From contig OZ260663.1 of NCBI GenBank assembly GCA_965285935.1, forward strand, positions 82,646,001-82,710,000: a DNA stretch of 64,000 nt, read 5' to 3'. The position numbers were made by a program, and so were the translations under genes. Below, piece by piece: positions 826 through 55,800 of the stretch. How positions within the stretch are numbered: position 1 is the first letter of the stretch; the number at the start of each line of letters is the position of its first letter. Below the pieces are notes generated by a model. It was not told the origin of the DNA and did no database searches. It saw nothing but the letters and a program-made list of their open reading frames with translations. Origin of the DNA: Ophelia neglecta (taxonomy: Eukaryota).

Positions 826-3800
826 TAGTTCAAATTAACCTGGTTAAAATAGTGGGTTACAAACCTGGAGATGCTTCATCATATTTTTCTGGTTGTCCAA
901 CGACTGTGTGTGTAAACGCCCAAGGTTCTGTGTTTATGTAAATGTGAAAATTGCATTGCCTTGTTATTTTCTTCTAGTTGTCAAGCAATTGTGGGTGTAA
1001 TACCTTATGTTTGTATACATAATACTGAATGTTACACCATACATGTAGTTCCACTGAATGGAACTTGTGTTTTCACTTGCTTATATTTTTTTCTTTTTGT
1101 GTAACGTTACCTTTTAATATTGTCAGAAATGACTAGAACTAAATACACAGTAAGGCTGGCATTGTTTTATCCTCTCTGCGGGCTTAGTTTCTTGCCCACC
1201 CACCCACCCCCACCCCTACCCCGCCCCTCCTCTCTGGAAGCCCTAGGAGAAACCCATCCCTTAATTGAGATTCTCTCTGAAACCACTTACGGAGAGTAAA
1301 GGCCGGGCCATATCCTTCGTGACCCTCGTCTAAATATTATTCCTAGAGCTGCTGTATAAACTAATAGTTTCCCAACACATATCACATACCAGAGACTAAC
1401 ATCATCACATAGTTTAAGAAGTTAACCCGTGTTTCTTGTAATAGTATCAACAGTATTACTTGGCTGTTTAGATTTCAGAGAAACCAGAAACGGCAAAGGC
1501 AAACATACTTGCAGCAAGTAAACATATATTGCCGATATTACTGGCACTTACAGAGGAAGAAGCGACAGATCCATGTCGATTAAAGAGTAGCTAAGAGGTA
1601 TAATTAGTTAGATTCCATGTCCCTCTTCGCGCTTAATTAGTATAGTTTAGGTTAGATTACGACAAGAAAGCGGGCATGCATGTGCATGCTAACTCAAAGC
1701 TAACTTACATTCTTGCAGAATAGCTTATATATTACATAAATATGCTGTTTGATGTTGGCCGTAGGTGTGCTGGTTGGACTACCGTTTGCTCCAATAGAAC
1801 GTTTAATCCATGCACTATACTTTTAGAAGGGGTTTCCTTTTGAAATCAACATCGATATCAGGTTAAACAATAGAAAATTTGAATCAATTTGCTTCTGCTA
1901 ATATTAGCTGTACTTAGTAACCTAACTAATTTTTTTAAATAAATATATATGCATTCTGAAGTTTAAAAAGATATTAACCTGTGACAATTTTGTGTTTGTG
2001 CCATGTGATAACAACATGGAATGTTTGCGAAGGCACAATAGACTGGTTTGTCGGAATTAATGAGAAAAGACAAGTCAGAGAAAGATTTATTCCAGCCACC
2101 ATGGTTTCCCGACATATAATGAAAACTGCGACTATGTAAGCTACATTAAAACTATGTTAGATGTCGTCTGCTGCGGCTTAACAGTCTTTGTGATAAGTCC
2201 TCAGGCAAGTATTGGTGGCGCCTAGATATCGCTGTGACGATGTGCAACAATCTGGACAGTGTATATCCCAGTACCTCCCTGAAAGATTAAATAGTCATAG
2301 AAAGTAAGAGTTTGTGAACTTTCATATTCTAGCGTTTGCAATTTGCTGATTATAAGAGCATAATACCCTGCTGAAGGTTGAAAAACTCGTAAAATAAACT
2401 TTTTTTGTGAACAGCTAGAAGTTTTCCCAAGAAGATATACACTTTACTATTTATTTTCTGAAAACACAACTTTAATCCATTCTCATTTTTGCGAATTTGT
2501 AATAGTTGCAGTTGTGGAGCAGACGACTGATGTTTGTGACTCTTCGGTTACCAGTTCTTGATTATTTTGGAGCATTTAAATGAATTTATACTATTTCCAC
2601 ATTTTTTGGTTTCTCTGCACATACTTAAGTTTGGCCAGTGTATTTTGCGAACAACGTACTACACAACGTTAAGATCGTTTATGAGGCCACGTTACTCGTG
2701 AGCTGCCGTTTACTTCAAGCCTAAGACAGGCAAATAAATCCAGTTCAACCCCAAAAAGCTCACTGCGCTAAGATCTTTTGAATAGAATGACGGTTATTGG
2801 TGCAGTTGAGAATTCTCTGTCCAAATATGTATTATGACCTTTTCCCTCAAGGTGGCTTATATTTATTACAACGCGTCGAATTTGTCAACGATGGTGTCCC
2901 ATGACTAGTGCCCAACCTCCAAACGACATAAAAAAACCGGTTGTGAACAGTTTTTACATCTTAATTCTTGTACACCGGAACTGCTAATCCAGCTCTTGTC
3001 ATTTTGTAATTCTGGCAATGATTTAATGTTTAGCAGCCCTATTATCAATTTTGACTGGAACACTGTCTTTGGCTTTGTGTACCGGAACCCTTTCCCAGAA
3101 TTGATGAACTATGAAACTCGTGTATCACAATGGATTAACAATTGAAGTGGAGAGTATACCTGAATAGGCGCATACTGAAGCAGAAAAATTAAATACAAAA
3201 TGAAGCGGATGTACGCAGACAAACATTATTATGTGTCAATCACAAAATTGTCCCATGGACAAAAAAACAGAAGGGCGGGGGGTATTCTGAGCGTGGCAAC
3301 CTGTCTTTTAGTCCGGTGTCGTTGTCCATGGAAAGAGTCACAAATATTAGTGGCGCCTGTTTTTTCAATTTGTAAATCACTGTAGCGAAATATCAGATGA
3401 AAATCTCACCCGCGGCTGTTTCATTTCATTTGTACTGATCTTCCCAAACTTATTTTCCCGCTGACAGACTCCCCTTGAATGGAGTGTTCTATAAACCACC
3501 AATTAAAAGAATCCAAGAAATCTCCGGTAAAGCTTAAGCAACATTTAGATCCTTTATCTACCCGAGGACGGGCGGTTGTTGTCGTTTTTTTCCTCTGAGT
3601 AAGATATCATCGGATGTGGTCCAAAAGGTACAGGTTTTATTTAACTTTTGGACCACTGCCGAACGACCACTGATTTCCCACATCAACTCTCCTATAATCA
3701 TACGAGTTGTATATGCTTATCGATTGCATTTAAGTGGGGTAAGAAACATTTAGGATGAAATCAAAATCTACGTGATTGGGTGTCTTGAGTTGGATTGCGT

Positions 3801-4479
3801 TCTGCTGAACAGAATGTAGTCCCATTCCAAGAAAGGAGGATATCGTGACTAGTTAGTTAGTGTGGCGGTCACGGACGTATACCTACTGGATGGCTTTGTT
3901 AGCAATACATGTAGTTGGTTATAGAATCGGTATATATCACAGTAAACGCTTCAAAGAAGAACCCAGACGAAGCCATCATAGCAACGTACTTCTTAGGTGG
4001 GGGTTATGCCGAGAGTCACCTCCTTATTGTATGCTAAAAGTGCTTTAGCTTACCGATTGTGTTGTTACTTAGGTTTTCATTTCCCACAGTTTTTATAGAA
4101 ATACCTAGCACTTTCACCATAACAAATTGACATTTAAAGAAATTCGGGCTTAAAACTTTCATATAGAAGATAAACATCAATTTAAATCTATACATTTAGA
4201 TCTGAAACCAAACAAAACTTGATGGGTATGCTAAATGTTAAAAATATAGAGATATGGGGGAGAGTGTACCGGCATGGATATATATAAAAATGAGTGTAAA
4301 TTTGTATATTGCTTAACCAATGCAGAAAGTGGAGTTTTCGCAGTATAAAGGCTTCAAACGTTGTAAATAGTTTTGAGTACAATTCAATGCTTTGGAAATA
4401 TTGCTTCTCGAAATGAAAATATTTGGTAATTTGTACATATGACCAAGTTGAGGCAGTGCCTGATGTAGTTTATATGCTC

Positions 4480-4900
4480 CTTGTCACATTATATTTGAGT
4501 TTGATGTAAAGAGCGACACCTTCTCATCGATATCTTTCAGCACATGCCAACATAAATGGTTCTGAAATGGTGCATAGTTGCGCAAAGAATGTCAACATTT
4601 GTATAGAGCGTGGTTGGCTGTCAGCAGTCTCTACCTCCGGGGTGGTGGTGTGTGAAGCGAGTTAGTAATATGGCTATTTTGTTGTGTCGCCCTAGGCCGA
4701 TTTGTGACAAACAGGGAATGCCTGGTGTAACCGATACCAGAGAATATAAAAGCTCCCCTAATTGATGACTTGGGAGAAGGTTTCTGACTTTCATATCTAA
4801 TGTTATGCACGTGTTCGTGGCCACACCGAAACTACTGTGTTATAATTGAACCCTGAGGGATCATGTGAGGGTGCGAGCTAGAGGGTAACTGATACACTAA
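4480..4900. promoter_or_regulatory. Paralogous conserved non-coding element I, left inverted copy
   Basis: 4480-4556 is 76/77 identical to the reverse complement of 52814-52890; similarity continues to about 4900. Confidence 0.7.
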
Positions 4901-5363
4901 CGGCGTTCATTTTGCAAAAATATCATAATACGTAAAAGGTGTGAGGTATTTAGAGATGAACTCCCGTAAGAACTTTGCTGGAAACATATTTAACCAATTT
5001 ATTTGATAAAAGCAATGATATACTCAGATGAAGATGCATGGTTATTTTTTGTTTACTTCAATAGTATAAGTACTAGTCATCACAATCACATATACAGGTA
5101 TATATGTAAGGATGAGATTACCTCATGAAATACAGTCAGTATGATTTGAGGGACATATAATAACTCTGTGGTGTTGATGCACTCTGATATGTTTAACATA
5201 TGTGACGATTATGTATAATACAATACGTCATAGTCATTTCACTACATTATGAACTATACAAAGTTCTTGAATGTGTACATTGATTGTGTGAATCATATTT
5301 GTTCAATGAGACCTTCAGTAGAGGTTTCTCATGTAAAGATAACAAGATTATGAGTTAAAAATA

Positions 5364-5576
5364 ACACGATTTGAATATCTAATAATCCTTTGTATGAATC
5401 TGTATTTCCGATACTGTTTTGTGACCAAGTTATAACGGCCTTGTCATGGTATCCCTTTTACGACAAATAACACCACGATTTGAATATTTAACAGTCCTTT
5501 GTATGAAATCTGACTTTACGATACTGTTCCTGTGACTCTGATTAACGGCATTGTCGTGTCACTGTCTTTACGACAT
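5364..5576. repeat. About 110-bp diverged tandem duplication
   Basis: CACGATTTGAATAT..TCCTTTGTATGAA..CGATACTGTT..TAACGGC.TTGTC..TTTACGACA twice. Confidence 0.8.
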
Positions 5577-6532
5577 TGTCATTGACACTGGGCATTAGCA
5601 ACCTTTGTCCTACAATGTTGGCGGTCTCTTTTGTGAATAGAACATGATACATATTTCATCCGTTACGATCCTGTCTGCATATTTAAAGGCAAATACTTCA
5701 ATAACAGTAATTATATATGGTCTATATGTGTGCTTTCATTGAATTTTTTGCTTAACTGCGAATAATATAGATACGAATTGGAAAGAGGAGTAATCATCAT
5801 CTTCTCAGTAATTTATTGTTGTCTTCAGAAGTCGTCACTGCTCGTCTTGTAGATACCTTGTCATTGTGAGAAATTGATACTCTGCAGGTGTGAAATAGTG
5901 TGTGTTTCAATATAATCAATCTTATGTCTTCTGTGTAATTTTCTTTGGCTGTTTGACTCGCAATCATCCATTGATAGACGGGCCAGGCCTCAGGACAGAG
6001 ACGCTTTGAACGATCCTCATTCCAGTACCTCTACGGTAAACTGTCCCGGTGATATAGGCGTTATTTCTTTCATCATCGGAAGTGTCCATGTTTCTATAAC
6101 ATAAAATTTAACAAATCGCTTTAAATAAACAGGTAATTGCAACCTTTGACTTTACGACCGATGTCGGAATGAATCGGATCCTCAAAGTTATATGTTGAAT
6201 CTGTACCTCGACCGTATTATATTGGTCTTAAAAAAAGGCAAAATGATTATGTACGTTTTGCAGCATCGTGTGATAATAGACTGGTATTGCTTGTTAACGC
6301 CTGTTACGGCCAATAAAAAAATTGAACGCTTCTGTTTATCTTGCGGGTCCCCCATATGATAACATAACATATTATGAATATCAGCAATGAAAAATTGCCT
6401 CTTTTTATCAATTCCGGATAAACATTTCCTAGACAGAGTGCAACACTTCTTAGAAGGTACTTAATTTTTATTAGCAACTTCTTACAACAATACTGATTAA
6501 AAAGCTATAGGGTTTTGACAAGCAAATGTTCG

Positions 6533-12509: not shown

Positions 12510-12930
12510 ATTGATTGAGTCATAACTACGATTGTCTGAAGCCAATCTTAATTTGCTGTCCGTCGGGGTTGAGCAATATATGACCCGCTCACCCCCGCTG
12601 TCCTCATATCTCTGGATCCTAACTCAGATACCTCCCCGGGCAACCAATCACCCAGTCCCTGCTAACAATCTCCTGATACAGTCTGCCAACATTATGACCG
12701 CTCTTCGGGATTTTATCGGTACTTGGCCTGATGAAGCAGACGTGATGGTGGCATGTCTTGCTAGACGATGGGTGAAATTTGTCACTCCTGTTTTATTAGT
12801 CTGTTTATTTCAGAGTTCAGAGTGGTAGGTCTCGGGAACAAGGTTAAGATTACTAACAAGGACCTCATAATTCACATTCTGTCACAGACAGATAAGACCC
12901 ATAGGCAGTGAAAAATTAACCGTTAATATT
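12510..12930. promoter_or_regulatory. Element B, inverted copy
   Basis: CCGCTCTTCGG..ACTTGGCCTGAT.AAGC..TGAAATTTGTCACTC..GGTTAAGAT..TAACAAGG.CCTC.TAATTCACATT.TGTCAC matches the reverse complement of 63.4-63.6k. Confidence 0.65.
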
Positions 12931-26130: not shown

Positions 26131-26528
26131 TCAATCCAGAATTGGCGAGTCTAACCGTTTTCTGTGCTGGCTGGCCATGGCAGCAGACGACAGATACGGA
26201 TGGTACCGATGAGCATACAAACTGGACGGATATATATTTCCCGCTCCAACATTTCCTGGAGAATCCTGGGAGGCGTAAAATCCAGCTGTGGGGCCAGCTG
26301 CTAGACTAGAAGGTAGCGTCCCGGAAGTAAATGGGTTCAAGGTGAAGGTCGGCAGTGTCCCCGCGGTGCTGCTGAGGCCGTACAGACTATTGTACATGCT
26401 GTACATACTACGGTCTGGGAGGTAGGCGCTGTGAGGGAGCTGCATCAAACGACCAGCTGTCACAGGGCGCCAAACTGGAAACGGAGACTGTAATCCACCG
26501 GCTCCAAGTCTTTCTAGACCATTCTCAT
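26131..26528 (-). CDS. TBX20: Tbx20 terminal coding exon 8 (S/P/Y-rich C-terminus)
   Basis: TATTTCAG acceptor, in frame with ORF 26131..26463, contains HRYHPY, ends at TGA 26133-26131; total CDS 1464 nt is divisible by 3. Confidence 0.9.
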
Positions 26529-27495
26529 CTGAAATAAATATGGCGATTTAATTCAAAAACAGTTTTGCTGGTAGGGCTAACGCTAACCACTACTTTGGGC
26601 ATTCAAAAATAAAACACATGAGGCAAGGGCGGAAGCGCGGGGGGGGGGGGGGGGGGTTACGAGTTCCCAATACTTTTTTTTAGTAATGCATGAGCTTTTG
26701 TACATTTCTAGGTCCAGGCCTGAATACAGCTTTAATCAATGACCAGCAAATAACACAATACCACTATATAACCTGATGTATAAATCTCCTTTTCAATGAA
26801 AAAAGGTCCCCTTGTTCTAACAAATAGGCCACACTGCCATGAAGATTGGCTTAGCCTTGGCCCGAATGACTTATTTATAACGATTGGTTCCCCAGTGAAG
26901 CGGGCTGCAGTCTGAAGGCCTGCTCACAGAATTGATGGTTACAGATCTGTGGTTGCAGAGACATGTAATTTAACGCGTCACTTGGCCGCTTATAGCCACT
27001 CGAACAATTAAAGTCAAGTGGACGACAAGTGGGGAGAGGACGAAATAAGATCAATATTTGTACTTGGTACTCAAATCTCTTTATTTTATAACGACTATTC
27101 ATTGTCCCAATTATATATATTTGTCCCAATTATAAAGGTTTTACGGATTTATTTAACCCACCGCAGACTCATAAAATGTACATAAACACACACATTTACA
27201 GATGGGAATATGAACTTCAGAAAGATTGAGGACAATGGTATATGTCAATTTAGAGAATGCTACCCACAACACCCTAGAGGAGTTCCCAATTTATTATACA
27301 AATGGCAGAGGCTCAGAAAGTACACACACAGAGCATCAAAAACACACTATTTTAAAAGCAACACCACAATGTGAAAATGCCTACTTTTTACGGGTTTAAA
27401 GTACAAGATGAAATATGTACTTATAGTTAAATTAAAGCTTAAACGTTTAGAAAATAACATTTGGTTTTCATAGAGGAGACACATAGTTTACACAC

Positions 27496-27608
27496 CTTTG
27501 CAGGTTCCTAGGTGCGCCTTAATCGACTCCTCGAATTCCGTGTCAGTGTAGGAGCGTAGCGGCGAGCGTGCGTACGTGTGCTGCTGCATCAGACTCTCCA
27601 TGCTGTCC
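27496..27608 (-). CDS. TBX20: Tbx20 coding exon 7
   Basis: TTACAG| DSMESLMQQHTYARSPLRSYTDTEFEESIKAHLGTCK |GTGTGT; resembles human ESVESLIQKHSYARSPIRTY; 113 nt keeps frame with exon 8. Confidence 0.92.
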
Positions 27609-28245
27609 CTGTAATAAATCATTGATTTTAGTATTGGATAATACAACGATTTATACGTGTACCCATTTATTTACGTTTATTAAGAGAGTTGTTGTGCAAG
27701 AGAATTTATCAATATGTACCGTCTGGTTCCTATATAGAGCAAATGTTACAATTACATATGTACTGTCTAATTAGGCCTACAAATAATTAATTGAACTTAC
27801 ATCACGGAGCCGGGCGGGAATGGGCCACTGAAAAAACAAAGGGACTTAGTTAGATTACATATATTGCGTGGTCAATTCATAACAAACAGGTTCTATGCAG
27901 GCCTATACAGGTGTTTAGAATAGCCTAAAGGAGGCTGTCACGTGTGCATCATTTATGTTATCGCTATGCGCGTTTGTTTAGATAAAAAGATGGCTTCGGA
28001 AAAAAAGTGTCAAGGCCGGAATTTGTGCAGAATTCCCCTCATAAGAAGTCCCCCCCCCCCACCCCACCCCACCCTCCCTCTCTCCGCTTTCCATACCCGA
28101 ATACGTTCTGACACATCAGACCTGTGCCTTGGAAAGAATCAACTATATTAAGACTGGTGTAACTCCTTGGGTTTATCTAAAGAGCACATTGGCATATGTA
28201 ATTGTCCCCTAAAACTGGAAGTTAAGCATAAGATAAACAACTTAC

Positions 28246-28322
28246 CTCTCTAGTTCGGTCAGCCGTGAGGAGTCCCGGAAACCCTTAGCGAACGGGTTGC
28301 TGTCTATTTTCAATTTGGTGAT
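28246..28322 (-). CDS. TBX20: Tbx20 coding exon 6 (end of T-box)
   Basis: TTTCTTAG| ITKLKIDSNPFAKGFRDSSRLTELER |GTAAGT; 77 nt; GFRDSSRLT is typical of Tbx20. Confidence 0.97.
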
Positions 28323-28721
28323 CTAAGAAAACAAATGAGAAGAAATGAGTCACAATACCGAATTTCTGACATGCATAGCATACATTAGGATGAGAATGAA
28401 AATGCTATCTGCAATTCTAGAAAGGACGAATATATCGCTCAATTCATTAAATTATACTAAAAGGAACCAATTGGGTTTTCACTATATATATTAGTATATA
28501 TAAATATAGTATCAAGTAGGCCTACTACATGTATTCACAACAGGTCTATTTTCATTGGATTCTGACTCCCAGAAAAAACTAAAGTAATGGGTACTTCTAA
28601 AGATACAGTCCCAGGCAAGGTGTAGGGCAGCCGCGGCTTTCTTTCGGCTGGGCCATGGCTTCAGCCGTACGTTTTTGTGGAAGGGACAGCAGGACTAAAA
28701 TGTGAATGTTAACTTGCTTAC

Positions 28722-28877
28722 CAGTTGGTTTTGATATGCCGTCACTCCTATGAAGGTACTTTCGGTGAAGATGAAGGTCTTAAATTCCTCGGCGTCCAGG
28801 TTTTGTATGGAGCTTGTGTCACGCTTCTTGACTATATGAATCCTGGGTTGATATTTGTGCATCGAATTTAAAATGAT
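28722..28877 (-). CDS. TBX20: Tbx20 coding exon 5 (T-box)
   Basis: CCTTACAG| IILNSMHKYQPRIHIVKKRDTSSIQNLDAEEFKTFIFTESTFIGVTAYQNQL |GTAAGC; 156 nt. Confidence 0.97.
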
Positions 28878-29086
28878 CTGTAAGGAAACAATGTTAATAA
28901 ATCAATTAATCAAGAAAATAATATTATATAATCAACCAATCAAGATTAATTGGCGTTACTCGTTTTTAAACATACCTAATCTAAGGTCTGGTGGTGGACA
29001 ATATGATACTGTATCTTAATACAGACTATATGCAAACGATTCCAATATTTATTTCACTTATGATGTTATTATATGATTATTCTCAC

Positions 29087-29258
29087 CTGTCCGTTTTTAT
29101 CGAGCATGTTGTTGGTGAGTTTGACTTTCTCGAAGCTGACGGTCTGTTTGGCGAGTTGCTCGCCGGTGTAAGGGGAGTCGGGGTGCATGTAGAGCCGGGT
29201 GGGTAGGGCCGGGTCTGCCTTCCCCGCCACCAGCCACGACGACCGGTGATAAGCGTAC
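29087..29258 (-). CDS. TBX20: Tbx20 coding exon 4 (T-box)
   Basis: [57 protein letters not shown]; acceptor TTTAAG, donor GTGAGA; 172 nt. Confidence 0.97.
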
Positions 29259-29384
29259 CTTAAATTACAAAGACGTATACCTCGTTACACACTAACAATA
29301 TTACCGGTACTTGCATCTTCCCATTCATTGAATATCAGAATATATTAGCTACTTTATAACAAAGGCCAGCGATAGATGACATAC

Positions 29385-29486
29385 CTGTATCTCTTGTTGT
29401 CGACAGGTACGATGTCCATGAGAACGGCGTATTTCGTGTCCGGGTCCAGCCCGCTAAAACTCACACGTAACGTCGGAAACATACGT
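29385..29486 (-). CDS. TBX20: Tbx20 coding exon 3 (T-box)
   Basis: TTTTTCAG| [34 protein letters not shown] |GTATGT; 102 nt. Confidence 0.97.
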
Positions 29487-29942
29487 CTGAAAAATAACAA
29501 TAATATTTCTATATGTGGGGGAAATTTATCGAACACATTTACATGTGCTGGAGTATTTGACAGTAAATATCACTTTTGTTGACTTTCAATGAAGGCCGTA
29601 GCCAGGCCGCGTAATGCCGGAGCTAAGTCGTGCATTTGTCGAGGCAGGGACTGTACACATGTAGGATGTTCATAAGAACAGTTAAGTTCCCACAGGACTT
29701 TGTTTTCATAGATTTTATTATCAAAGCACTGATCTACGCACAAACCGTTTCATATATAGTACAACAAGCTTAGGCCTTATAGTAGCATTTGAAGTAAAAA
29801 ATCAATAACTTAAGCTAACCATGGGTTTAGGCCTTAGGTTGGGCCTATCTATAGGCCTATATGCAGTCTCGTTCATTTTTAAATAACTGACAAAGTTAAC
29901 AAGACAAGTCCCATTCACTGTTTTTAGTTTGTTTTGAAAACC

Positions 29943-30207
29943 AACAACAGGTTCGCGGTATCGAGAGCCCGGCCGACACACCTCTGCTTACGGAGAGATG
30001 TCCCCACTCTATAGAGCGTTGGTGGGGCATGATGTTTGGGCGGAATCAACACATTATCGTGTTTGTTTTTAAAATCACCAGCTCGGCCATGTTTGAATTG
30101 ATCTGCTGTGATTTGTGAAGTGGCAGACGAGACCGTTTGGCGCTGGTTGTATATCTGGACGCCACCTGTGATGGGTCTTCCAGCGTCTGATTTCGTCCAC
30201 CTGGCGT
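29943..30207. promoter_or_regulatory. Tbx20 intron 2 conserved element J
   Basis: About 265 bp alignable with 54672-54939, e.g. TGATTTGTGAAG(T/A)GGCAGACGAGACCGTT. Confidence 0.65.
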
Positions 30208-32704
30208 TGGAAACATCAACAATGACCTCACTGGGTCTTTTACCAGCCCTATTTAAACGTATAAACTAACTATATTATTTTGTTGATATTTTATTCCAAC
30301 ACAATGATGTTCAACCGAATATATGTACGCAAAAAAGTGTGATACACGAAAGTATTAATTATTTTTCGTTTTAACAGTGACGTCAATCAAATTACCGATG
30401 AAACCAATACTATAGAAAGAATATATTTCTGTTAGTTCATGGGGGGGGGGGTAAAATTCAGATCAGTTAGTCCAACTCTGGGCATAGAAAATGATAAGCC
30501 TAGAAATTGACTTAAGAGAAAGTGCAGAACTATATGGTTTAGTTTGCTGACATGTCCTTGTGGTAACCGCGAAGGTTTGATATTATTGAAGCCTACATGC
30601 AGTTGCTATGGGAACCGGGCAATAGGTTGAATGGAAAAGTGGGAAACAGACTGCAGTTGAATCTGTGTGGTTTTTCGCCGCCAAGCCCGCTAGAAGACTG
30701 TAACAAAATTAATCCTCCATCGCTAGAACCACGAGCAATGTCGATTTTAATACCAACTAGATCTGGGAGCACAATATTCGTCATGCAAATCAGGTAACAG
30801 CTAGTGCGGGGGGGGGGGGGGGGGCTTGGAGGGATTTTCCTAACAGTGAGGCCACATGTAAAGAAATTAGAAGGGTTGGTGATCCCAAAATGGCCACCAG
30901 TATGTTCAACAAAGCATAAAAACCACAATTTCACAGTCAGACGGCGGCCATTCCGTGAACTACATTTCACCACAGTGACAAAGAAATACAAATCTCTCTT
31001 TCATCAGTAAGTAAATTGGCAAAACAAGCATCACTATTAATGTCGCCCTCATTGAAAATGGCATTCTTTCCCATGACGTTTTATTAATAATACTGGTCTA
31101 ACTTAATATTTACGAGTTTTCAATATACACTGGAAGTGATTTAGTCCTGATAAAATACTTTTGTTTGCCTAAAAGTGCTTGTATGGTGATGAACGTTTAA
31201 TATTAAAATTGCATAACACCGAGAGATTCACAATTAGAATAATCAATTTTCTTCCAATAACAGATATATCTATTTTAGCGAAAGCCGAGAAAATAAAACA
31301 TTTTACACAATAGCCACATTTACTCATAAAAAAGATGGCCCATCAATTTAGTTACCCACAAAAAATCACAGTTGACAATGCTTGTTTAGTGTCAAATAAA
31401 TTATATCATCAACTACAGCCGTTTTATTAAAATGACATTCAGCTAAATGTCTCTCAGCTTTTTATCATCTCGGTGCATATGTAATGATTTGATAATGCAC
31501 TGTTAAGTTGTAAATTGCAGTAGATTTATTTACAATAATGGGAAACAGATTGTACTATGTTAATCCAGCTCAGTGATGTATTGCCATCTATGAACTAAGC
31601 AGATAAAATACATCATAAACGATATCATATTCCATTGATTCTTAGTTTCAAAAGCGAACAGAATAACTAATTTATCATCTAATAGTCTAGTCATTTGCAC
31701 AATAGAATATGTTGAATTTGACGATTCAAATCAACTGCTACATTAATATATATGACATTAAAACAAGTCATTTACATATTGGTGTGAATGCGGCCTTTGA
31801 AGTCATTGAAAGCCTTTTTTGACGACAAAAAGATTGAGTTTGAAAATCTGATATCACACCTGGTGTCCAATTAACCTGAGAGTTAAAAAACTAACTCCTA
31901 AATTATATTCCCCTGTATAAACAGGGCGACATGACCTTTTACATCCACACTCTAATAGTTTATATGCTTTAATTTAAATCTTTTAAATATAAATTCGGAA
32001 TGTTAATAGGGTCCTGGCATGTAGGGCTGTGTGCCATGCACTCTTCATATATTTATTATTATGCAAATATATATGTGTGTGTAATTATGTATGTGTGATA
32101 TCGAGTGTGGAGTCCGGTGCTATATGAACAGGCAGTGAACGTGGTAAACCTATAGCCGTTACGAGTATACTATAAGTTAAAATTCACGAATTAAGCGGTT
32201 GAAACAAAATCGCGAAAATTATGAGTGGCGAAATTTTTCTGACTTACATCTTAAAGGTACTAGTCTCATTCCAGCGACAAGCTCTAGGACAGTCTACACT
32301 GACCACAGTTAGTATCACGAAGCTAGCTAAAATACCGAGAATGAGGATCTAGACTAGCCATGTACAGGAAAATATTCATCGTTTCGTTATCCTTTCGTGG
32401 ATTCTCGAACTTTATGTGTGGCAAATTAAAGAATCTAGGAACATTTCTGCGGCAAGTGAGATGTAGGACTATACCACAAACAACTATAGGGTCGCTGTAG
32501 TCTGTACATGAATTTCAACACAACTCAATACGACGTTTTTACCAGTCTTTAGAATGATTCTTGGAAGTAATCACGAAACATTGCACTGAGGACTAGCTAT
32601 CATGCTGGACGATGGTAGACCTAGAGGTTTTTATATCTATATAGCATTAATACCAGCCTTATTAACGTGAAAATGAGGCTGTCATCTAGAATAGGATAAC
32701 TTAC

Positions 32705-32939
32705 CGTCCTGTCTTGGTGATGATCATTTCTGTGCCGAGTTCATGGAACTTGTCCCAGAGGTCTTTGGTCTCCAGACGACACTGAATGTTGGCCAGTTCC
32801 TTACAGCCGTCGACCGAAGTTCGGCCGCTGGAGGCGCCGGGAGAGACCGGGGAGGGACGGGTCTTGAATGCGCTCAACCCCTTACCGGCCGGCACATCTA
32901 GTCCGTCAAAGGTGCTGGTCGCAGATTCCACGAACTTCT
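32705..32939 (-). CDS. TBX20: Tbx20 coding exon 2 (start of T-box)
   Basis: Acceptor TTTCTTCAG; the splice gives PLEKFVE (human PLEQFVE) ...[24 protein letters not shown]; donor CG|GTAAGT; 235 nt. Confidence 0.96.
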
Positions 32940-33324
32940 CTGAAGAAATAAATACACAAAGCGACGTTTTAAATATCTGTAGATAAATCTGTAAACAAAT
33001 CTGATGAATGGCATCTGAGACTTTAGCTGGTAACGGTTTCAGTCATTTTTGGTTTCGTATATATAGCATATACTTGTATATGTCTATAGAGAAATGTGCT
33101 ATAAAACGCACGCAAGCGACCCAGAAGACAACCAGTTTTTTGTCTTAGGTTAAATACTTTTTGGGTACGTTGTGGGTTGAATGAATTTCGCCTGAAGCGT
33201 TTCCAGATGAAAGTCAGCCGAGAGTGCTGAGTATTGAATTTATGAAGACCACATGTTTACAAGAAATTGGACCCACTGCCTCGGGCGGGCGATAAACACT
33301 TTCGATATACTGTTGTTTTATTTC

Positions 33325-33425
33325 ATCTTTCAGGGTGGTAAACAGGAGTTTACACTGTCCAGAGCTGTAAATGTCGACGACTTGACATTTCGGCGGCGCC
33401 ATTTTTGTGTGCAAGGCACATCTTT
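33325..33425. promoter_or_regulatory. Tbx20 intron 1 conserved element K
   Basis: ATCTTTCAGGG..TACACTGTCCAGA..CTTGACAT..GGCG shared with 55127-55220 and, inverted, with 2200-2293. Confidence 0.65.
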
Positions 33426-34108
33426 GATATATACGTATGGTAAACTTTACCCAACATGCCTTGATGCTTTTCCATTTCGGAGGATGCTGGGAGTTTACTA
33501 GACTTACGACAAGGCACAACAGACGACCTCATGACCCTGGGGTGCTTTGTGGTGGCACAATTGGCGGCAGTATGAACTCCCACATTTTTCCTGTCCTTTT
33601 CCATCAAATAAGAAATATTGTTTGACCTTTGAAGAAAGGAACCTAGCGCTGTTAACCATAGGCCTACTCATACCCCGAGATATTGCCACCAAAAATAACC
33701 TTAACGGAAAGCATCATTGTCAAGACGGATAATTATATGCATTCGAATCACTCTATGGCGGTACAGATATGATGGAATATTGCTAATGATGATGAATACT
33801 AGTCTGACTGGTATTAATAGGCCTGTGAATTCAATATTAAGTATAAATGTTGCATTTTACTCTATTGCTTGCTGCAAGCAAAAAACTTCATGGAAATAAT
33901 TTATGGTTGGGGCCTAAACATTGTGCTGACAACTGGGTTAGAAAATTAATGGGTGGAATGGCAGTAAGTATAATAATGGAAGGGCGATTTCGCCTCAATG
34001 GAAATGTTTAAAGAAGATTAAAAAGAAAATCTGGGCAAACCGCTGACCGTTTCCTGGGATGATGTGAAGGGTAAGTCAGATTATTAAAGTGAAAAATTGT
34101 TTGCTTAC

Positions 34109-34319
34109 CTAGTGGAGTGATGACTGTTTCCGGGGGTGCGACGGGGGAGGGAGCCGGGCTGGGTGTCCTTGAGCCCCCGGGTCGCCCGCCCTCTCGTCCC
34201 TCCGACGAGGAAGAAGCAATCAAGGAAGCGATTGAGAAGGCCGAAGCCTTGCTGGACAGCATCGTCTTGGGCGGGGTGGTAGGAGGAGAGGAAACTCGCT
34301 GTTGTAACTCTACGGACAT
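34109..34319 (-). CDS. TBX20: Tbx20 (H15/midline-like) coding exon 1, with eh1 Groucho-binding motif FSIASLI
   Basis: ATG at 34319; MSVELQQ...LSSKASAFSIASLIA resembles vertebrate TBX20 LSSRANAFSIAALMS; donor G|GTAAGC at 34108; 211 nt, phase 1. Confidence 0.9.
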
Positions 34320-43314: not shown

Positions 43315-43880
43315 CCTGATTTCATGTTACTGATCTGACATTTCTGTCATTTTCAACTGACCTGAATTCTCTGCCATGTTTACTAACATGATATTTTCGT
43401 CATGTTTAATGACCAGGGATCATTTTCCTGTTAATTGGCAAGACAATTCTGTCATGTTGACTGACGTGGGGGCGTCTTATATTGACCGACCTGACATTAC
43501 TCAAGTTACCTGACCTACCATCACTGACATGTTTATTGACCTGACATTTCAGCCATGTTTCTTATCTCTGTCATGCTTCCCGACCGGATATCACTGTCAT
43601 GTTTTCTGACCTGCAAACTCTGTCATGTTTACTAACCTTACCTCTCTGTAATGTTTACCGAACTTACATCACTGCCATGTTTTCTGACCTGACATCACAT
43701 AATCTTTACTGACCTGATATCTCTGTCATGTTTACCGACCTGACACCTGTGTCGTATTTACTGACCTGATTTCTCCGTCATGTTTACTGACCTGACTTCT
43801 TTGTCATGTTTACCGACCTGATATCACTGTCATGTTAACCAATCTGACATCTGTGTAGCGTTTTCTGATCTGTTCTGTAA
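43315..43880. repeat. Degenerate minisatellite, unit about 29 bp
   Basis: Many tandem variants of CTGTCATGTTTACTGACCTGACATCT. Confidence 0.9.
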
Positions 43881-44950: not shown

Positions 44951-47877
44951 AAATAGTTTATGGCAGTGTTTCAATGTTGTTACTTGCATCTTTTCTAACA
45001 CTATGCACATCTGTTCTTATCTCTACGGTGCTAGTATCTTCGCGAACATTCATGTAAGTCTATCTTACCAAAACAGACGGGGCTCAAAATTGTCCTTTTC
45101 AAATATATTTGTAGTATACATGTCAGACTACAATAGAAACACCGCAACTGCCAATCATTGGTCTAAATGGTGGTAGATTAGCTGATATATATTCAAAGGG
45201 GAAGTGAAAAGTCAATTCATCTAGATGTAAATAATCTCTATGCCACATTAGACCACCCTGAATGTTACTAGATTCATGTATTTGTTCAACTTTCATAGTG
45301 GTATGACCATCAATAAAACCTTACTAAACACCAACACTCGGATTACACCCAGCCATATTGTAAGAAAATGTACAACGAATTACGCCCCAAGGTGTCAATT
45401 CATCATCCAATTTTTCCTGTTGACTGCTGTGACCTCAGAGTTAGGCAGCGAGGAAACACAATCCCTTACTTAATAGACCCGTCGTATTTCTGTTCTTGTG
45501 GTGATTTGCTATCTTTAACACTTTATGATGTATACTACCTACCGCAGGCAGCATTAAATACAGTTCGTCGAACGACTGCTTTTCTGCAGCCTGTAAAGAG
45601 TAACTTTATTAAAACTCATAAATAGCGAGTGGGCGAACTGTTTTGCAAAGAGAGTTGTTGTTCGCATACCTTTAAGTGAAACATGAAAACCCATTCCGTT
45701 GTTTTTCCTAAACTTTTTAAAACAACTTTACATGATTAAGTAAGGTCGCTGTATAAAAAGGCTCTAAACAGTGTCAGCTTCAATTTTATAGACGAATCAA
45801 AACAGAGAGGCACCTGCAGGTTACAACCATATCTCATTCCAAGAGTGAACTTGGACCCACAAACAAAATGACATGCCGTGTTGTATATGGTTTTCTGTTT
45901 AAGGAAACGCTGTACGGATCTTACCATAAATTGGTGGGTCTGTAGCTGACGGTCCATTACGTATTCGGACTGAATTAATTTATTATGATCGATAAATAGC
46001 TATGCATTGCTGTTATAATATGGCCTGATCCGAGATGAAACTAAACTGGGGCTGTAACAGATATAGGGAAAATCTAGTTTGTGCTTACACTAGTAGAGTT
46101 GCACCAAATTGTGGTGTAATAGTTTTGAACAGGGTGAAGATTTCTACGATCTTAATAACAGTAAGTCAGTTCTATCCCCTGACAATGTGTTAATTGGATG
46201 AACATCATATTTGAAACTAATCGTTCATTTTGTCAAGAGCTTTTTCCATCGTATCTGCCTCACATATTAAATAAGTGTGATGTTATAGGAGGAGAACTAA
46301 AAACGAGTGACACACTTTGTATAAGTAGGGAAGACGGTTCAAAGAATCTCCACTCCCTTTTGTCACACTGCACACAGTTATGCAATAGAGTAAGTGCTGA
46401 AAATCAAATCACAAAACAACGGGAGTAGTTATACGCGGACAAAGCTGATCATTGATCTGAAATAACCATTAAATCAAAAATTCTATTTTCTGATGTGATC
46501 GGTGGTTCGGCTGTTGGTTCCAGTTGATTTCGTACCTATTTAATGGAACGTTCTTGAATAGTGATTTGCCTTTATCTGCCTGGTCTCTGTTCCGGTTTTT
46601 ATTTATTAACCAAGTATAGTCTATAAAGCTAATTATCTCTTATCTTATTGACAACGTCCATTCAATAAAACTCGAAATACCAGTTGTTGCTATTGTTAGA
46701 AGTGTTCACAGGAGGATATATGTAGCTGTAGCTATAGTCATCAAAATCCTTGTTAAGGCAGTTTTCTACTGTCATCGTGGACTGAGTCAATAAAAGAAAG
46801 TACCAATTGTTGTTGTTAAGAATTCAGAGTGTATGCGCATAATCAGACTATCTATTAACATGTTATCGATAAACCAGTGTATCCAAAGGGAAGCTACATT
46901 GGAGTCAATAACAATTTCAAATTATTGGCTGTAACATGGCTGGGTCTATAAAAACGACAAATCACTTGTCGTTAGCTGTGTATATAAATAGTGCGCGCAC
47001 AGTGGGTGCATTTGAAAAAAGGCATGCCAACAGAGAATTGAACCTTTTTAGAAGATATTTAAATTGTTTATTGTATGACAACAACGACACATATTCTAAA
47101 CCTGATCTCTTTATAATGCAAAGTTTCGCCAGCGTAGGGTGGACATCAATGGGTTGCCAACAACCCACTCTCTTCGACATCCCACATTTGTTTGGTCAAT
47201 GTATTATCACTCAGTCGCTTCCGTTTGTTTACCCATAAATATACAGATTTGCTCAAGGGGCTTCTATTTGGTGTTGAATGTTCCTGTGTTTACTTCGGGT
47301 AGCAACTTTTGTTATGTCTGTGACTTCAGTTCATTCTTGTACCCAAGCATTCTGCCGACCTGTTTTATCCAAAAAGAGGGACAAACACATATGTTTCCTT
47401 GAAGGACTATCCCCACTCCCAAAATAACCCTTCTCCGCTCATATGTTGGTCTGGTTTTCTTTCTCAACAAGACTCTTATGTTTCCTGTTATTGAAGAACC
47501 TTATGGACCAATCTTGATTTTTTTGACGTGGGGTGGATGGCATATTTTGTTGAAAACTGGTACTAAAAGTCCCCGTAACCCTAATAAAACAGCTCTGTTA
47601 AGAAAAAACAAGATAACCTCATGATGATAGACAATTTATGGATTTTGCTTATTGGTTGAAGCGTGGAAAATTATAAATGTTGGTGTTTGTGTCTCTTTTG
47701 TGCATGGAACAAAATATTTCCACATATGAAACCACTTTGAATACAAGGATTAAGTATGTTTATATGAATTTAATTTAAACTATCTTTAGCCAATATGTGT
47801 GTGAACGCAGTTCGAGGGAACGGGCAAACTTGCAGAGTTTATAGACTGCCTGGGAACCTCCCCAGAGCCGGCCGAGT

Positions 47878-51200: not shown

Positions 51201-52489
51201 TTTGCCCGGGATTTTAATTTTGTAAATTGGTATGGCCGTGATTTTTAATCATGCGATTCTCTTCCTGGAGAGTTAGTTTTCTTTACTGTGTAAATATAAA
51301 GGACATTGTCCTCTGGGTGTCATTTTCTCGCCACCTCTCTAAGCTTGGTCGTCTGTCGTTTTCTGTTGTTATCAGATTGTCATCCATTTAATACCAATCA
51401 TTGGTATGGGTGTCAAAAATCTACAAGAAAATTTCGAGACTTGACATATTATGTGCTGAGCGACTGTGACACACTCAACTTGGCCACATTGTCACCACGT
51501 TCAAACAGCTGAAAGCTACGGCCTCGACATGAAACACCACTATTAGAGGAAAACATTCCTTTACACCGGCAATCGTCACAGTAGTAAATACAAAGGTAAC
51601 TTTGCACATTTCTTAACCAAAAATAACGAACAACACAGCCACTATAATATAAAGATCTTTATCTAATAGCCTTACCGCCATACATATTTATGTTATTGTG
51701 GATGACACAAGTGTCTCATAGCTGGCTCTAGGTGTTATCTAATAGTCCACTAAAACAGCAGACGACAGGATGTGAGAGTCAAACGCCAAGGAATATAAAG
51801 GACGCAGACAATTTATTGTGATGAAACATCCAGGTTTTAACACCTGGGAGGTGACATTTACACTTAATAACAAGGAGTGCTCAATAAAGAGCAAATGGCG
51901 GTTTTTCAAAGCCAAGCCTAGTCCAATGCTATTATTATTTCGTAGCGTGTCGGTTTTCAAGCATCCAAAAAGCTGTCACCCATGCAGTTGGAGACGGGGG
52001 TAACCGGCTGGGAGGGGTGAAGTTTTTGGAGCGGAGGTGGTGTCAGTACCCTCCTTTTATTCCCCTAGTTGCTCCACTAGCTTGGGGTGGGTGTCCATTC
52101 CGAGAGGGAGGTTCGGGGCCCTAGTTTCCTGACCCATTTTTGGCAGTAGACACACTGTCCTCCGATTTTCAGGATTAATAATGAATACCAATGTAAAGGC
52201 CTACTACGCTGATGTCGAGATTTGATGAAGTAAACAGTATCCTATTGAAGCTGCATATCAATGTTCCGCTGAACAATATGCCATTTAACTCTTTGACACA
52301 CGAGACCACTAAGCACTATATATGTATACATATGTATATATATATGTTATATATATTCATGTATACAAAGGCCTTGGCAATGCACATTTATGCAGTTTCT
52401 TGTTTATCATTTATTTCCGATGGATTTCAAAACGGGTGTAGCTTTAACAGGGTTATGTGTTAGAAAATACCTAACAGGTTGAAACATTA

Positions 52490-52890
52490 AATGCCAATTA
52501 CCATTCGTCATTTAGCTCCACCACACCCCGCAGGGCGCAATTACAGCACAACGGTGTCGCTTTCCACTAGAACACGTGCGACTTTACCAATCTATCATAG
52601 CAGTAAAGCTTTCATACACCCTGCTATCAGTTACACCATTTGTTCTCTGTTTGTCACAGATCAGATTTTGTTACTGCAGACGGCGAAGTGACAAAATGGC
52701 GGCAACACTTACTCCCAATGTGCCGCCACCCGGAGGTAGAGATTGCTGACAGGGAACGACGCTCTATCCAAATGTTGACATTCTTTGCGCAACTTTGCAC
52801 CATTTTAAAACCTTTTATGTTGGCATGTGCTGAAAGATATCGACGAGAAGGTGTCGCTCTTTACATCAAACTCAAATATAATGTGACAAG
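52490..52890. promoter_or_regulatory. Paralogous conserved non-coding element I, right copy
   Basis: Inverted partner of 4480-4900; carries T-box-like AGGTGTCGC, TCF-like ACATCAAAC, GATATC and TGACA motifs. Confidence 0.7.
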
Positions 52891-55800
52891 AATTTATTTT
52901 GCCAGTCGGACCATGTCAACGGTTAGTTATTTGCAAATTAACTAGTATTTCGACTATTCGATGCCGTGGCACATGTAAATCGGTTTGCTTTATATAGCCA
53001 ATACTTGTAACACGAGTTAACTGTAAGAAATCCTAAATGTGAACCAGTTAGTGCCTTGCATTATTGGAATCGGGGGTGGGGGAAGGGGGGGGGGGGGGTC
53101 CACTGAGGGGCCGGCGAAATTGTGTGCTTTATAACAGTGGTAGCGGGCTACCATCCGACGACCTCTACAGCCTGTCTGTAGAAACATTTTAAAAACGGGA
53201 GTGTACATCCAACACACAATGCCACATAATCAACCGATTACAGTCTTTACGATCGGGCCGAAATTACTGTCAGACCCACAAATATCAATCCCCGTTTCTC
53301 TAACTGCAAATAAACTCAGATTGATAATAACAAAAATACATATCGACATCACTTGCCCTTTAAAATTTTCCGAAGATGCGAGATGTGAGCACAAAACAAA
53401 CTGGTCAGGATTTAATGTACGACCGAGATGAAATATGTTATGGGTCAGAGGTAAGCCCTGCATAGCAGTTATTCACCAGACACGATCTAACACTAATAGC
53501 TAGTATATGATTTTAATGTCCACTGGAAATTGGTATGAGATGGTTTGTCCCTTGGACACTTTGTCCAACTTTCCTACTACACAGTATTATTCCAGGAATG
53601 CCTGTGACATGAACTCCTCATCCTATGATATCTAATCTGCTGACAGACGACAGAAAGTCGTCTGCACTCGGCCAGATAATTACAGATATGGTTCCGGATT
53701 TATCTTATTTGTTTTCTTATTTTCCCACGATTAGTGGTTAATACAACGTTCCATTGAGAGAGTCTGTCAGCGGGGAATTTTTTTGAGATAGACAGCATAC
53801 AAGAAATGTAACAGGCAGCGGTTACATTTCTATTTCAAAACCGCATTGGCTGTGTTCAACACAACAAAAACATTTGAGTGATAGGCCTACAACGCGAGCA
53901 GTGGTCGTGAGCGCAGCCACGGACGTAAACTTATAAAGATTACTGGCTACGGACGCAATTTGATAGTTGTAGACTTCATGGCAGAGGGCTAAGGCTCAAA
54001 TACCACGCTACATTTTTGCTGTTTTCAATGAGCAATGTTAATTCCAGATATATGTATAATTATAAATCTATTTTGTTCCTCGGAACCAGGACACAATGAA
54101 ATGAGAAAGTTTATATTTATTCGGATATCTTTTGCTCGGCCACAGTGTCGACCCTTTGTACCACTTGTACTTAAGAGAATTGTCAATACATGGGATTCTG
54201 TGAGACATTGCGGGGTGGGGGGGGGGGGGCTTGCCATTTCTGGGGGGGGGGGCTTGCCATTTCTAAAACCAAAATATAGAGTAAGGACATTACTCGGGCT
54301 ACTATTCAGAAAAGGGGTGTCGGTTGTGTGGATACTGGCTTGCCTGCTGCTTTAAAGGGCTTTACGTTGATGACTTTCATACAAAAAGTGAACAAGTAAA
54401 ATTATCAGCCATATATTTTTGTTCACATACTAAAATGCAACATGGTCACTAGTGAAGCATCATTACTTCTCTTATGGTATATTCTCCCAACTTTGCCTGT
54501 GGTTTGGTAAAATATGTGCACACACAATTTGATTTTTCATCTGCCCCTGTGGGTGGAAGTAGTAAATGTTTCCAGTCACTTAGTAGATCAAGTGATGTGT
54601 GTATAGTGATAGAGCATTCTTCACGTGGCACAAATGATCTGAGTAGTTTGCAGACGACCAACTTACACTCGACAACAGGCGATGTAGCGATGATTGCCAG
54701 CCTTACTCACCTCGGCTAAGGAGTTAAGTTCTTACCCCAAGGCATTGGTGAGAAAACTTCTGAAGAAATCAGCGCATCGTCGTAGTTGTTTTTAGACATC
54801 ACCAGCTTCTTGGATTTAGGTTTGTTTGAAATGATCGGCTATGATTTGTGAAGAGGCAGACGAGACCGTTCGGGGCTCACTGTTAATCCACACGTCACAT
54901 GTGATGAGCCTTCAGGTGTTTAATCCCCTTCACCTGGCGGCAGTGAGCGGCAAGAGTAATACGGGATGATGGCTTCGAGTGCACTAGCATGATCCTTAGA
55001 ATATACTTTCGAATTTCGAAAAGTGTGCTCGAATATTTATGTTCAATTAAAAAGTTTCAATCAAGTGTTTGCCTGTGTTTTTAATTCAAGGCTGATAGAT
55101 TTTGTATACCTTTTCTCATTTATTCAATCTTTCAGGGAGGCACTGGAACATACACTGTCCAGATTTTTACACTTCAACGCCTTGACATATTGGCGCCCCA
55201 TATATTGCCAGGCGACATTTTAGAATGCCCTTTCAACCGGAGCAGACGACAATTTCCATACATGTTACTTAGCAGACGACACCAGCGTGACCTAACTGAG
55301 CGACCTCAAGAATTAAATCTCGTAACACAATTAATGCCAGAAACAAAGCTCTCGGCAGTCTGTCCGGTTCAATTTAAAATGACACAGCCCATGATTCGCA
55401 GAGCACCGATGTCATATAGCCGAGTCATTAAGAAGCACTTGATAGCTTCTCTTTAAATTCCTCTACGTAGGTTTTCAAGCCTGGGTTACTTTTCCACAAG
55501 CTGGTCGTGGCCGCAGGATGGCGTGCTGACAAGAGCATGTACACTCCTCCTTGGTGGAGTATCAATCCACCATCCATTTTGTTATGTGAAAGGCCAGAAT
55601 CACAATATTATACATTTTAGCCTGTGATATACTGGTTAAGTTGTCCTTGGTGTAAGTCGCATAGGAAAGGACAAGAATTAGTTTGTACGATGATTGGCAT
55701 TCGCCAGCCTATTTCTGATAAAGGCAGACAAGAGCATACAATAACAGTATGGTTCCGTACTAACTTACTCAGCCGGGTAAAAACATAGACACAACACAGA

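What the first reader, a model, noticed from the sequence alone, without database searches (positions are those of the whole stretch)
4480..4900. Near-ultraconserved paralogous element (76/77 bp) 48 kb from its inverted partner
Seen: 4480-4556 differs at one base from the reverse complement of 52814-52890, with high identity continuing to about 4648, while the flanks are hardly alignable. It contains a T-box-like half site (AGGTGTCGC), a TCF-like site (GTTTGATGT), GATATC and TGTCA. Inference: the most constrained enhancer of the locus, possibly autoregulatory or Wnt-responsive, or else a gene-conversion tract.
Basis: partly seen in the sequence, partly recalled or inferred. Interest (0 to 1): 0.75.

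Follow-up and report, generated by a model that had tools for sequence, protein, structure and literature searches.

The report
Gene-conversion tract in duplicated Tbx20 non-coding block
Two inverted copies of a non-coding block left over from duplicated Tbx20 genes are almost identical over about 100 bases, most likely because one copy recently overwrote the other and not because that stretch is an exceptionally constrained enhancer.

Summary
Window 4480-4556 matches the reverse complement of 52814-52890 at 76 of 77 bases, inside a 162-nt, 94% inverted pair.

The block has four copies in the 762-Mb genome, all within 200 kb on one chromosome, in exon-less remnants of a triplicated Tbx20 gene. 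A fifth, decayed copy lies 3' of one intact gene. It is not a transposon, a known RNA or coding.

Flanking collinearity pairs A (here) with C, and B (the partner) with D. Only in 4481-4580 does A group with B: 22 sites to 1, against 48 to 71 outside. There, A-C is 58/77 and C-D 42/66, so this is the family's least conserved part. Right of 4602, A-C (38/40) again exceeds A-B (34/39).

I read the 76/77 as a recent interlocus gene-conversion tract. A separate 65-nt core (4577-4641; all pairs 84-95%) is the part conserved family-wide and is the better regulatory candidate.

The scan had already noted the ghost copies in this same window (s1-741932).

The parts
4480..4556 (+). Near-identical stretch of copy A (76/77 to copy B). 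It is the youngest part of the inferred conversion tract.
   Evidence: A-B 76/77, A-C 58/77, B-D 51/66, C-D 42/66.
4480..4601 (+). Largest extent of the A-B conversion tract as seen from A and C. The smallest extent is 4481-4580. It is bounded by the A=C sites 4479 and 4602.
   Evidence: maximum chi-square: inside 22:1 (A=B not C: A=C not B), outside 48:71, permutation p 0.001. A-B 117/122.
4577..4641 (+). Deep core conserved in all four copies. It is the best candidate for a constrained cis-regulatory core.
   Evidence: all six pairs 84-95% (C-D 56/65). 4-way invariant columns are 18/20, 13/20 and 17/20 in 4580-4639; the same four copies and nothing else in the genome.
4417..4870 (+). Whole homologous block, copy A.
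   Evidence: nhmmer envelope 4380-4901.
52483..52989 (-). Whole homologous block, copy B. The near-identical arm is 52729-52890.
3361..3635 (+). Neighbouring conserved block of the same ghost unit. It is shared with copies B, C and D at the expected, unremarkable identity.
   Evidence: 72% to C; 3416-3503 against 53814-53730 at 75%.
2162..2293 (+). Block homologous to the region just upstream of the first T-box exon of the intact genes. It marks copy A's unit as Tbx20-derived.
   Evidence: 74% to copy B's unit and 76% to intact gene 3.
26131..34319 (-). Intact Tbx20 gene of the window, given as context. It lies between the two inverted copies.
   Evidence: ORFs (first exon 34008-34319, last 26131-26463). 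T-box exon matches at window 28710-32778.

Best explanation
The element is one of four copies of a roughly 450-nt non-coding block. The block belonged to the 3' flank of an ancestral Tbx20 gene unit. It now survives in four exon-less duplicates of that unit around three intact Tbx20 genes. By descent, copy A (window 4417-4870) is the partner of copy C, and copy B (window 52483-52989) is the partner of copy D. The near-identity of A and B over 4480 to about 4580-4601 was produced by interlocus (non-allelic) gene conversion between these two inverted copies, 48 kb apart on the same chromosome. One copy was used as a repair template and overwrote about 100-120 nt of the other. The event was recent enough that the tract differs by 1 in 77 to 5 in 122 bases. 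Its left edge is sharp at 4479/4480. Direction is unresolved. Independently of that event, a 65-nt core (4577-4641) is kept in all four copies. That core is the part most likely held by selection as a protein-binding cis-regulatory module. Shown: the copy number, the duplication history, the phylogenetic discordance and the conservation profile. Inferred: the conversion mechanism itself and any regulatory function.
For: Copy number and place: 4 of 4 genome-wide matches lie on C5 at 82.545-82.743 Mb. The three T-box gene copies on C5 sit at 82.50, 82.67 and 82.76 Mb.

Duplication history: 9 collinear inverted blocks join A's segment to C's, and 17 join D's to B's. Only 3 short blocks join A's segment to B's.

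Discordance: core 4480-4641 is A-B 151/161, A-C 134/162, B-D 115/150. Downstream 4701-4870 is B-D 110/145, A-C 111/159, A-B 97/144. AC|BD informative sites number 26, only 1 of them in the core. B and D share indels to the right of about 4685.

Maximum chi-square places the tract at 4481-4580: 22:1 inside against 48:71 outside, permutation p 0.001. A permutation test on runs of concordant polymorphic sites gives A-B p 0.0007.

The tract is the part least conserved in C and D (C-D 42/66). In the family's best conserved 40 nt (4602-4641), B is 34/39 identical to A while C is 38/40. The B-side changes there are at 4602, 4612, 4616, 4617 and 4627. Selection on A and B alone would not predict this pattern.

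Conversion is visibly active in this cluster. Intact genes 1 and 3 are 84/87 and 92/92 identical in intronic stretches, but only 81/97 and 71/88 in a T-box exon between them.

The published signature of interlocus conversion is high identity with conflicting, low-identity flanks. It occurs in either orientation between linked paralogues of moderate divergence (PMC3966223, passages read).
Against: No other species or population sample could be reached. The classical test (paralogues more alike within than between species) was therefore not done.

A model in which A and B are both strongly constrained while C and D are relaxed fits some numbers. A-C core divergence (17%) is about half the A-C flank divergence (33%).

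The count of AB|CD against AC|BD sites, inside the core versus outside, is only weakly significant (4:1 against 10:25, Fisher p 0.043).

The permutation tests cannot separate conversion from copy-specific relaxation of constraint.

The right edge is ambiguous. From the B and D side, B stays closer to A than to D as far as 4753 (53:13 against 36:52). More than one event, or D's decay, may therefore be involved.

The tract still holds 5 differences in 4480-4601, four of them in 4557-4575.
Confidence: 0.68

Rival explanations
1. Selection only. 4480-4641 is an enhancer under very strong purifying selection in copies A and B, which flank the middle intact Tbx20 gene. Copies C and D have lost that constraint and drifted.
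For: A-C core divergence is about half of flank divergence, as expected if only C drifts. A and B flank the intact gene almost symmetrically, with their midpoint at 28685 beside the T-box exon 28710-28883. The block as a whole carries a family-wide conserved core.
Against: The 76/77 stretch is the least conserved part in C and D (C-D 42/66). Yet B differs from A at 5 of 39 aligned positions in the family's most conserved 40 nt, where C is 38/40. The A-B identity jumps from 33/60 to 76/77 at one position, while A-C shows no such step. The named T-box and GATATC motifs are absent from C and D.
Confidence: 0.17
2. A transcribed element: an exon of a non-coding RNA, a small structured RNA, or a remnant of the Tbx20 3' UTR acting at the RNA level.
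For: The fifth copy lies 1.9-2.4 kb 3' of the last conserved coding block of intact gene 1, in sense orientation. That is compatible with a long 3' UTR. A splice-acceptor-like string precedes 4540 in all four copies (seen by eye in the alignment).
Against: Rfam gives 0 matches at gathering threshold on the window and 0 at E up to 1 on 4300-5000. Folding z-scores are -0.10 and +1.19. The RNAalifold covariation term is unfavourable (+3), with 4 of 50 pairs compensatory. No RNA run holds the stretch (0 of 3 listed runs are RNA), although that is weak evidence. The only frame open in both A and B changes the amino acid at each codon where they differ (read by eye from the translations). Pfam gives 0 families for the 101-aa ORF of copy B.
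Confidence: 0.07
3. A young transposon, or an assembly artefact that copied sequence between the two places.
For: The left boundary at 4480 is sharp.
Against: There are only four copies genome-wide, all in one 200-kb cluster and embedded in collinear paralogous segments. Separate contigs carry each copy with its own flanks.
Confidence: 0.02

Closest known systems
Interlocus (ectopic) gene conversion between linked paralogues, as reviewed for Caenorhabditis (hsp16 inverted modules, col-12/col-13, fog-2/ftr-1; PMC3966223, passages read)
   Same: A short stretch is near-identical, is embedded in much more diverged flanks, and conflicts with the duplication history. The partners are linked and may be inverted. 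Tracts of tens to a few hundred bases occur between moderately diverged copies.
   Different: Here the tract lies in non-coding DNA of exon-less gene remnants, not in coding sequence. The partners are 48 kb apart. No between-species confirmation is available.
Duplicated conserved non-coding elements around paralogous developmental regulators in vertebrates (PMC2781166 and PMC1896008; search listing and start of abstract only)
   Same: A non-coding block is kept in several paralogous copies beside a developmental transcription-factor gene. Retention differs between copies.
   Different: Those elements are defined by cross-species conservation and come from whole-genome duplication. Here the copies are local segmental duplicates in one genome, most sit in units that lost their exons, and cross-species conservation is unknown.
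Arm-to-arm gene conversion in large palindromes (recalled from general knowledge, no call)
   Same: Inverted repeats on one chromosome are homogenised by intrachromosomal conversion.
   Different: A and B are not arms of one palindrome. By flank evidence their true duplicates are C and D, and only about 100-160 nt is homogenised.

Membership tests
Interlocus gene-conversion tract | Tract groups two paralogues against the relationship shown by their flanks | tested here: met
   Flank collinearity pairs A with C (9 blocks) and B with D (17 blocks). Within 4481-4580 the count is 22:1 for A=B, against 48:71 outside.
Interlocus gene-conversion tract | Run of identity longer than expected from the spread of variable sites (GENECONV-type test) | tested here: met
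   For A-B the longest run is 16 concordant polymorphic sites, p 0.0007, and the score test gives p 0.0009, each from 10,000 permutations. Caveat: copy-specific relaxation of constraint could mimic this.
Interlocus gene-conversion tract | Paralogues more alike within a species than orthologues between species | not testable with these tools
   No related animal genome is reachable. The metagenome scan with a 21-nt core string gave 0 matches.
Interlocus gene-conversion tract | Identifiable donor and recipient | tested here: inconclusive
   Tract to C is 58-59/77 and tract to D is 51-52/66. Both directions fit.
Duplicated conserved non-coding element / enhancer | Non-coding | tested here: met
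   There are stops in five of six frames. The one frame open in both copies differs non-synonymously at each codon where A and B differ (read by eye). Pfam gives 0 families.
Duplicated conserved non-coding element / enhancer | Conservation among paralogues above background | tested here: met
   In 4577-4641, C-D is 56/65 against 50-64% in neighbouring stretches. The binomial P for 56 or more of 65 at 0.60 is 4e-6. Repeated conversion could also produce this.
Duplicated conserved non-coding element / enhancer | Conservation between species | not testable with these tools
   No related genome is available.
Duplicated conserved non-coding element / enhancer | Enhancer activity or open chromatin | not testable with these tools
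   None of the 3 listed runs is on record as RNA, and no chromatin data were available.
T-box- or TCF-responsive element | Binding motifs kept across the paralogous copies | tested here: not met
The T-box half site is present in 2 of 4 copies (C is changed at two bases, D has it deleted). GATATC is present in 2 of 4. The TCF-like string is exact in 2 of 4, with D one base off.
Transposable element | Many dispersed copies | tested here: not met
   4 of 4 matches lie in one 200-kb cluster.
Known RNA family / structured RNA | Covariance-model match or structure beyond shuffles | tested here: not met
   Searches gave 0 matches. Searches gave no covariation support and z-scores of -0.10 and +1.19.

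The most novel reading that the evidence does not exclude
The 65-nt core (4577-4641) is a working cis-regulatory module, either a spare enhancer or a paired boundary element. It has been retained in four exon-less Tbx20 duplicates, while the copy beside one intact gene has decayed and none was found 3' of the other two. The ghosts would thus survive as regulatory scaffolding for the intact genes. The two copies that face each other across the middle gene would be kept matched by conversion. This would be enhancer retention after gene death, with concerted evolution, in a local invertebrate gene cluster.
Probability: 0.25. Interest if true: 0.6.

Novelty: new member of a known kind. Interest (0 to 1): 0.35.

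Why it matters
Within-genome near-identity of a non-coding block is easily mistaken for ultraconservation. Here the comparison with two further paralogous copies shows that the most identical stretch is the least conserved one family-wide. The motif-based enhancer reading would therefore have targeted the wrong 77 bases. It redirects any reporter or deletion experiment to the 65-nt core at 4577-4641. It also adds direct evidence that short-tract conversion operates across tens to hundreds of kilobases in this Tbx20 cluster. That must be allowed for when dating the duplications or when arguing that the ghost copies are under selection.

Tried and rejected
Coding exon: rejected. There are stops in five frames. 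In the remaining frame every A-B codon difference is non-synonymous (read by eye). Pfam gave 0 families for the 101-aa ORF in copy B.

Known or structured RNA: rejected.

Transposon: rejected.

Assembly artefact: rejected.

Expression: none of the 3 listed runs is on record as RNA. They come from one sample and one study. Transcription therefore stays open.

Allelic diversity as a constraint signal: uninformative. Heterozygosity reaches 14 differences plus 2 gaps in 170 nt at 3646-3815. However, the whole of 4085-6200 shows no allelic variant, so the core is not distinguished from its flanks.

Cross-species evidence: none. A scan of metagenome contigs with a 21-nt string of the deep core found 0 matches. 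The other public collections hold no animal genomes.

Direction of conversion: unresolved.

Literature: searches for Tbx20 tandem duplicates in invertebrates and for conversion in paralogous enhancers listed nothing on this locus. In the Acropora paper PMC12360431 I read the Tbx20 passages. They are expression tables with no bearing here. PMC3924837 and PMC4467073 were seen only as listing and start of abstract. I opened no supplementary files, and I do not think any bears on these claims.

Organism identification by the large protein search was left out as not needed for the claim.

Full report
**Observation.** Reading both places and the repeat finder confirm an inverted pair. The arms are 4480-4641 and 52729-52890, 162 nt long, 94% complementary and 48,087 nt apart. 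Within it, 4480-4556 is identical at 76 of 77 positions. A sensitive self-comparison of the window extends the homology to 4480-4754 against 52890-52607 (79.4% over 287 columns, E 5.8e-67). The pairwise alignment shows scattered similarity to about 4870. Upstream of 4480 the two copies are 33/60 identical.

**Not an artefact.** Contigs of three public runs (one sample, one study, possibly the assembly's own sample) bridge the left edge (4353-4509) and the right edge (4600-6200) of copy A with no difference. A separate contig lays on 4496-4641 with exactly copy B's differences and runs off into copy B's flanks on both sides.

**What it is not.**
- Rfam gives nothing at gathering threshold on the whole window, and nothing at E up to 1 on 4300-5000. 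There are no tRNAs.
- Single-strand folding is no better than shuffles (z -0.10 and +1.19).
- The consensus fold of the four copies has an unfavourable covariation term. Only 4 of 50 pairs show a compensatory change.
- Five of six frames carry stops. The one frame open in both A and B changes the amino acid at each codon where they differ (read by eye).
- The 101-aa ORF on the opposite strand of copy B is closed in A by the single tract difference and hits no Pfam family.
- It is not a transposon. The whole 421-nt block and its 74-nt core each find the same four places in the 762-Mb genome and nothing else.

**Where the copies are.** The window is C5:82,646,001-82,710,000. The four copies are:

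| Copy | Position on C5 | Strand |
|---|---|---|
| D | 82,545,352 | + |
| A (the finding) | 82,650,480 | + |
| B (its partner) | 82,698,607 | - |
| C | 82,743,067 | - |

T-box exon matches on the same chromosome define three intact Tbx20-type genes. They lie at 82,500,524-82,504,798 (+), 82,674,710-82,678,778 (-, in the window at 28710-32778) and 82,764,034-82,767,502 (-).

- A's surroundings are collinear, in inverted order, with C's: 9 blocks, 82,644-82,668 kb against 82,747-82,727 kb.
- D's surroundings are collinear with B's: 17 blocks, 82,512-82,551 kb against 82,721-82,696 kb.
- A and B share only three short blocks.
- In each unit the element follows, in the same order and orientation, blocks that in the intact genes lie just upstream of the first T-box exon and in the following intron. 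The exons themselves are missing.
- A profile of the four copies finds a fifth, decayed copy at 82,510,896-82,511,350 (+). It lies 1.9-2.4 kb beyond the last conserved coding block of intact gene 1, in sense orientation. Restricted search gives E 7.4e-6 and 0.014 for two collinear pieces.
- Nothing comparable was found in 8 kb 3' of genes 2 and 3.

The block is therefore an ancestral 3'-flank (or 3'-UTR) piece of the Tbx20 unit.

**The key result: discordance.** By descent the pairs are A-C and B-D, and the flanks of the element say so.

| Interval | A-B | A-C | B-D | C-D |
|---|---|---|---|---|
| 4480-4556 | 76/77 | 58/77 | 51/66 | 42/66 |
| 4480-4641 | 151/161 | 134/162 | 115/150 | 108/151 |
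| 4602-4641 | 34/39 | 38/40 | 31/39 | 32/40 |
| 4642-4700 | 35/57 | 46/59 | 34/69 | 36/59 |
| 4701-4870 | 97/144 | 111/159 | 110/145 | 80/139 |

- B and D share two indels to the right of about 4685.
- 25 of the 26 AC|BD informative sites lie outside 4480-4641.
- A maximum chi-square scan puts the A-B segment at 4481-4580. The count is 22 A=B sites to 1 A=C site inside, against 48 to 71 outside. The flanking A=C sites are 4479 and 4602, and the permutation p is 0.001.
- A permutation test on runs of concordant polymorphic sites gives p 0.0007 for A-B.
- To the right of 4602 the true relationship returns. There B differs from A at 4602, 4612, 4616, 4617 and 4627.

**Conversion or selection.** A selection-only model, with A and B constrained and C and D relaxed, fits some numbers. 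A-C core divergence is about half of A-C flank divergence. Two features argue against it.
- First, the 76/77 stretch is the least conserved part of the block in the other copies (C-D 42/66). The stretch that all four copies keep is 4577-4641: pairs at 84-95%, C-D at 56/65, and 4-way invariant columns at 18/20, 13/20 and 17/20.
- Second, B has drifted precisely in that best-kept stretch while being a near-perfect copy of A immediately to its left. A decaying copy whose left part was recently overwritten explains both features. Selection does not.

Conversion is also demonstrably at work nearby. Intact genes 1 and 3, 260 kb apart and inverted, are 84/87 and 92/92 identical in intronic stretches. 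Yet they are 81/97 and 71/88 identical in a T-box exon between them.

The tract's divergence is 1/77 to 5/122. That is at or below the allelic difference seen in this individual a few hundred bases away (14 differences and 2 gaps in 170 nt). The event is therefore young.

The pattern matches the published signature of interlocus conversion between linked paralogues in either orientation (PMC3966223, passages read).

Two caveats remain. Seen from B and D, B stays closer to A as far as 4753 (53:13 against 36:52), so an older or second tract is possible. Direction cannot be told.

**Motifs.** The TCF-like string is exact in A and B, one base off in D and lost in C. The two TGTCA-containing strings and an 8-nt palindrome-like string at 4578-4585 are kept, or changed by one base, in all four copies. 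Short strings of this kind occur every 250-2,000 nt in the window. That these strings bind particular factors is recollection, not a result.

**Function.** None is shown. My best reading is that the 65-nt core is a protein-binding cis-regulatory piece, inherited from the 3' flank of Tbx20 and retained in the ghosts. I give this about 40%, because repeated conversion among the four copies could also keep it alike. The 76/77 identity itself carries no information about constraint.

**Comparison with the known.** The mechanism is ordinary interlocus gene conversion. The substrate resembles the duplicated conserved non-coding elements described around vertebrate developmental genes (PMC2781166, PMC1896008; listing and start of abstract only). 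It differs in being local, in sitting in exon-less units, and in lacking any cross-species test. I file it as a new member of a known kind. Interest is moderate to low, 0.35. The finding is real and instructive, but the striking identity has a mundane cause. The scan had also already flagged the ghost copies and the selection-or-conversion question in this same window.

Noticed in passing
L022-L024 (C5:82,619,004-82,643,256), just left of the window: A satellite of about 484-nt units, roughly 50 copies 96-99% alike. It sits between two halves of a large inverted segmental duplication.
   Followed up: no
L010/L011 (C5:82,498-82,509 kb) against L030 (C5:82,769-82,761 kb): Intact Tbx20 copies 1 and 3 are a mosaic. 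Intronic stretches are 84/87 and 92/92 identical, beside a T-box exon at 81/97 and 71/88. This indicates conversion between intact genes 260 kb apart.
   Followed up: partly
L011 (C5:82,510,896-82,511,350, +): A fifth, decayed copy of the element lies 1.9-2.4 kb 3' of the last conserved coding block of intact gene 1. It carries a roughly 160-nt insertion inside the core. None was found 3' of genes 2 and 3.
   Followed up: yes
window 47869-48079 and 63326-63536 (also 12679-12896): A second block family is restricted to the cluster. The two direct copies are 88% alike. All 5 of 5 own-genome matches lie on C5 at 82.47-82.71 Mb, and local BLAST shows more diverged copies in most units.
   Followed up: partly
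window 43322-43877: An imperfect tandem repeat of 26-nt units, at least 9 register-shifted copies.
   Followed up: no
window 60637-60746: An exact 55-nt tandem duplication in a G-rich stretch.
   Followed up: no
window 3646-3815: Two haplotype contigs differ by 14 substitutions and 2 indels in 170 nt, so allelic diversity in this individual is very high. No variant is seen in 4085-6200.
   Followed up: no
window 4480 / 52890 against 28710-28883: The midpoint of the inverted A/B pair (28685) falls beside a T-box exon of the intact gene between them. Such a pair could mediate inversion of the 48-kb segment, but no joint was seen in the contigs.
   Followed up: no
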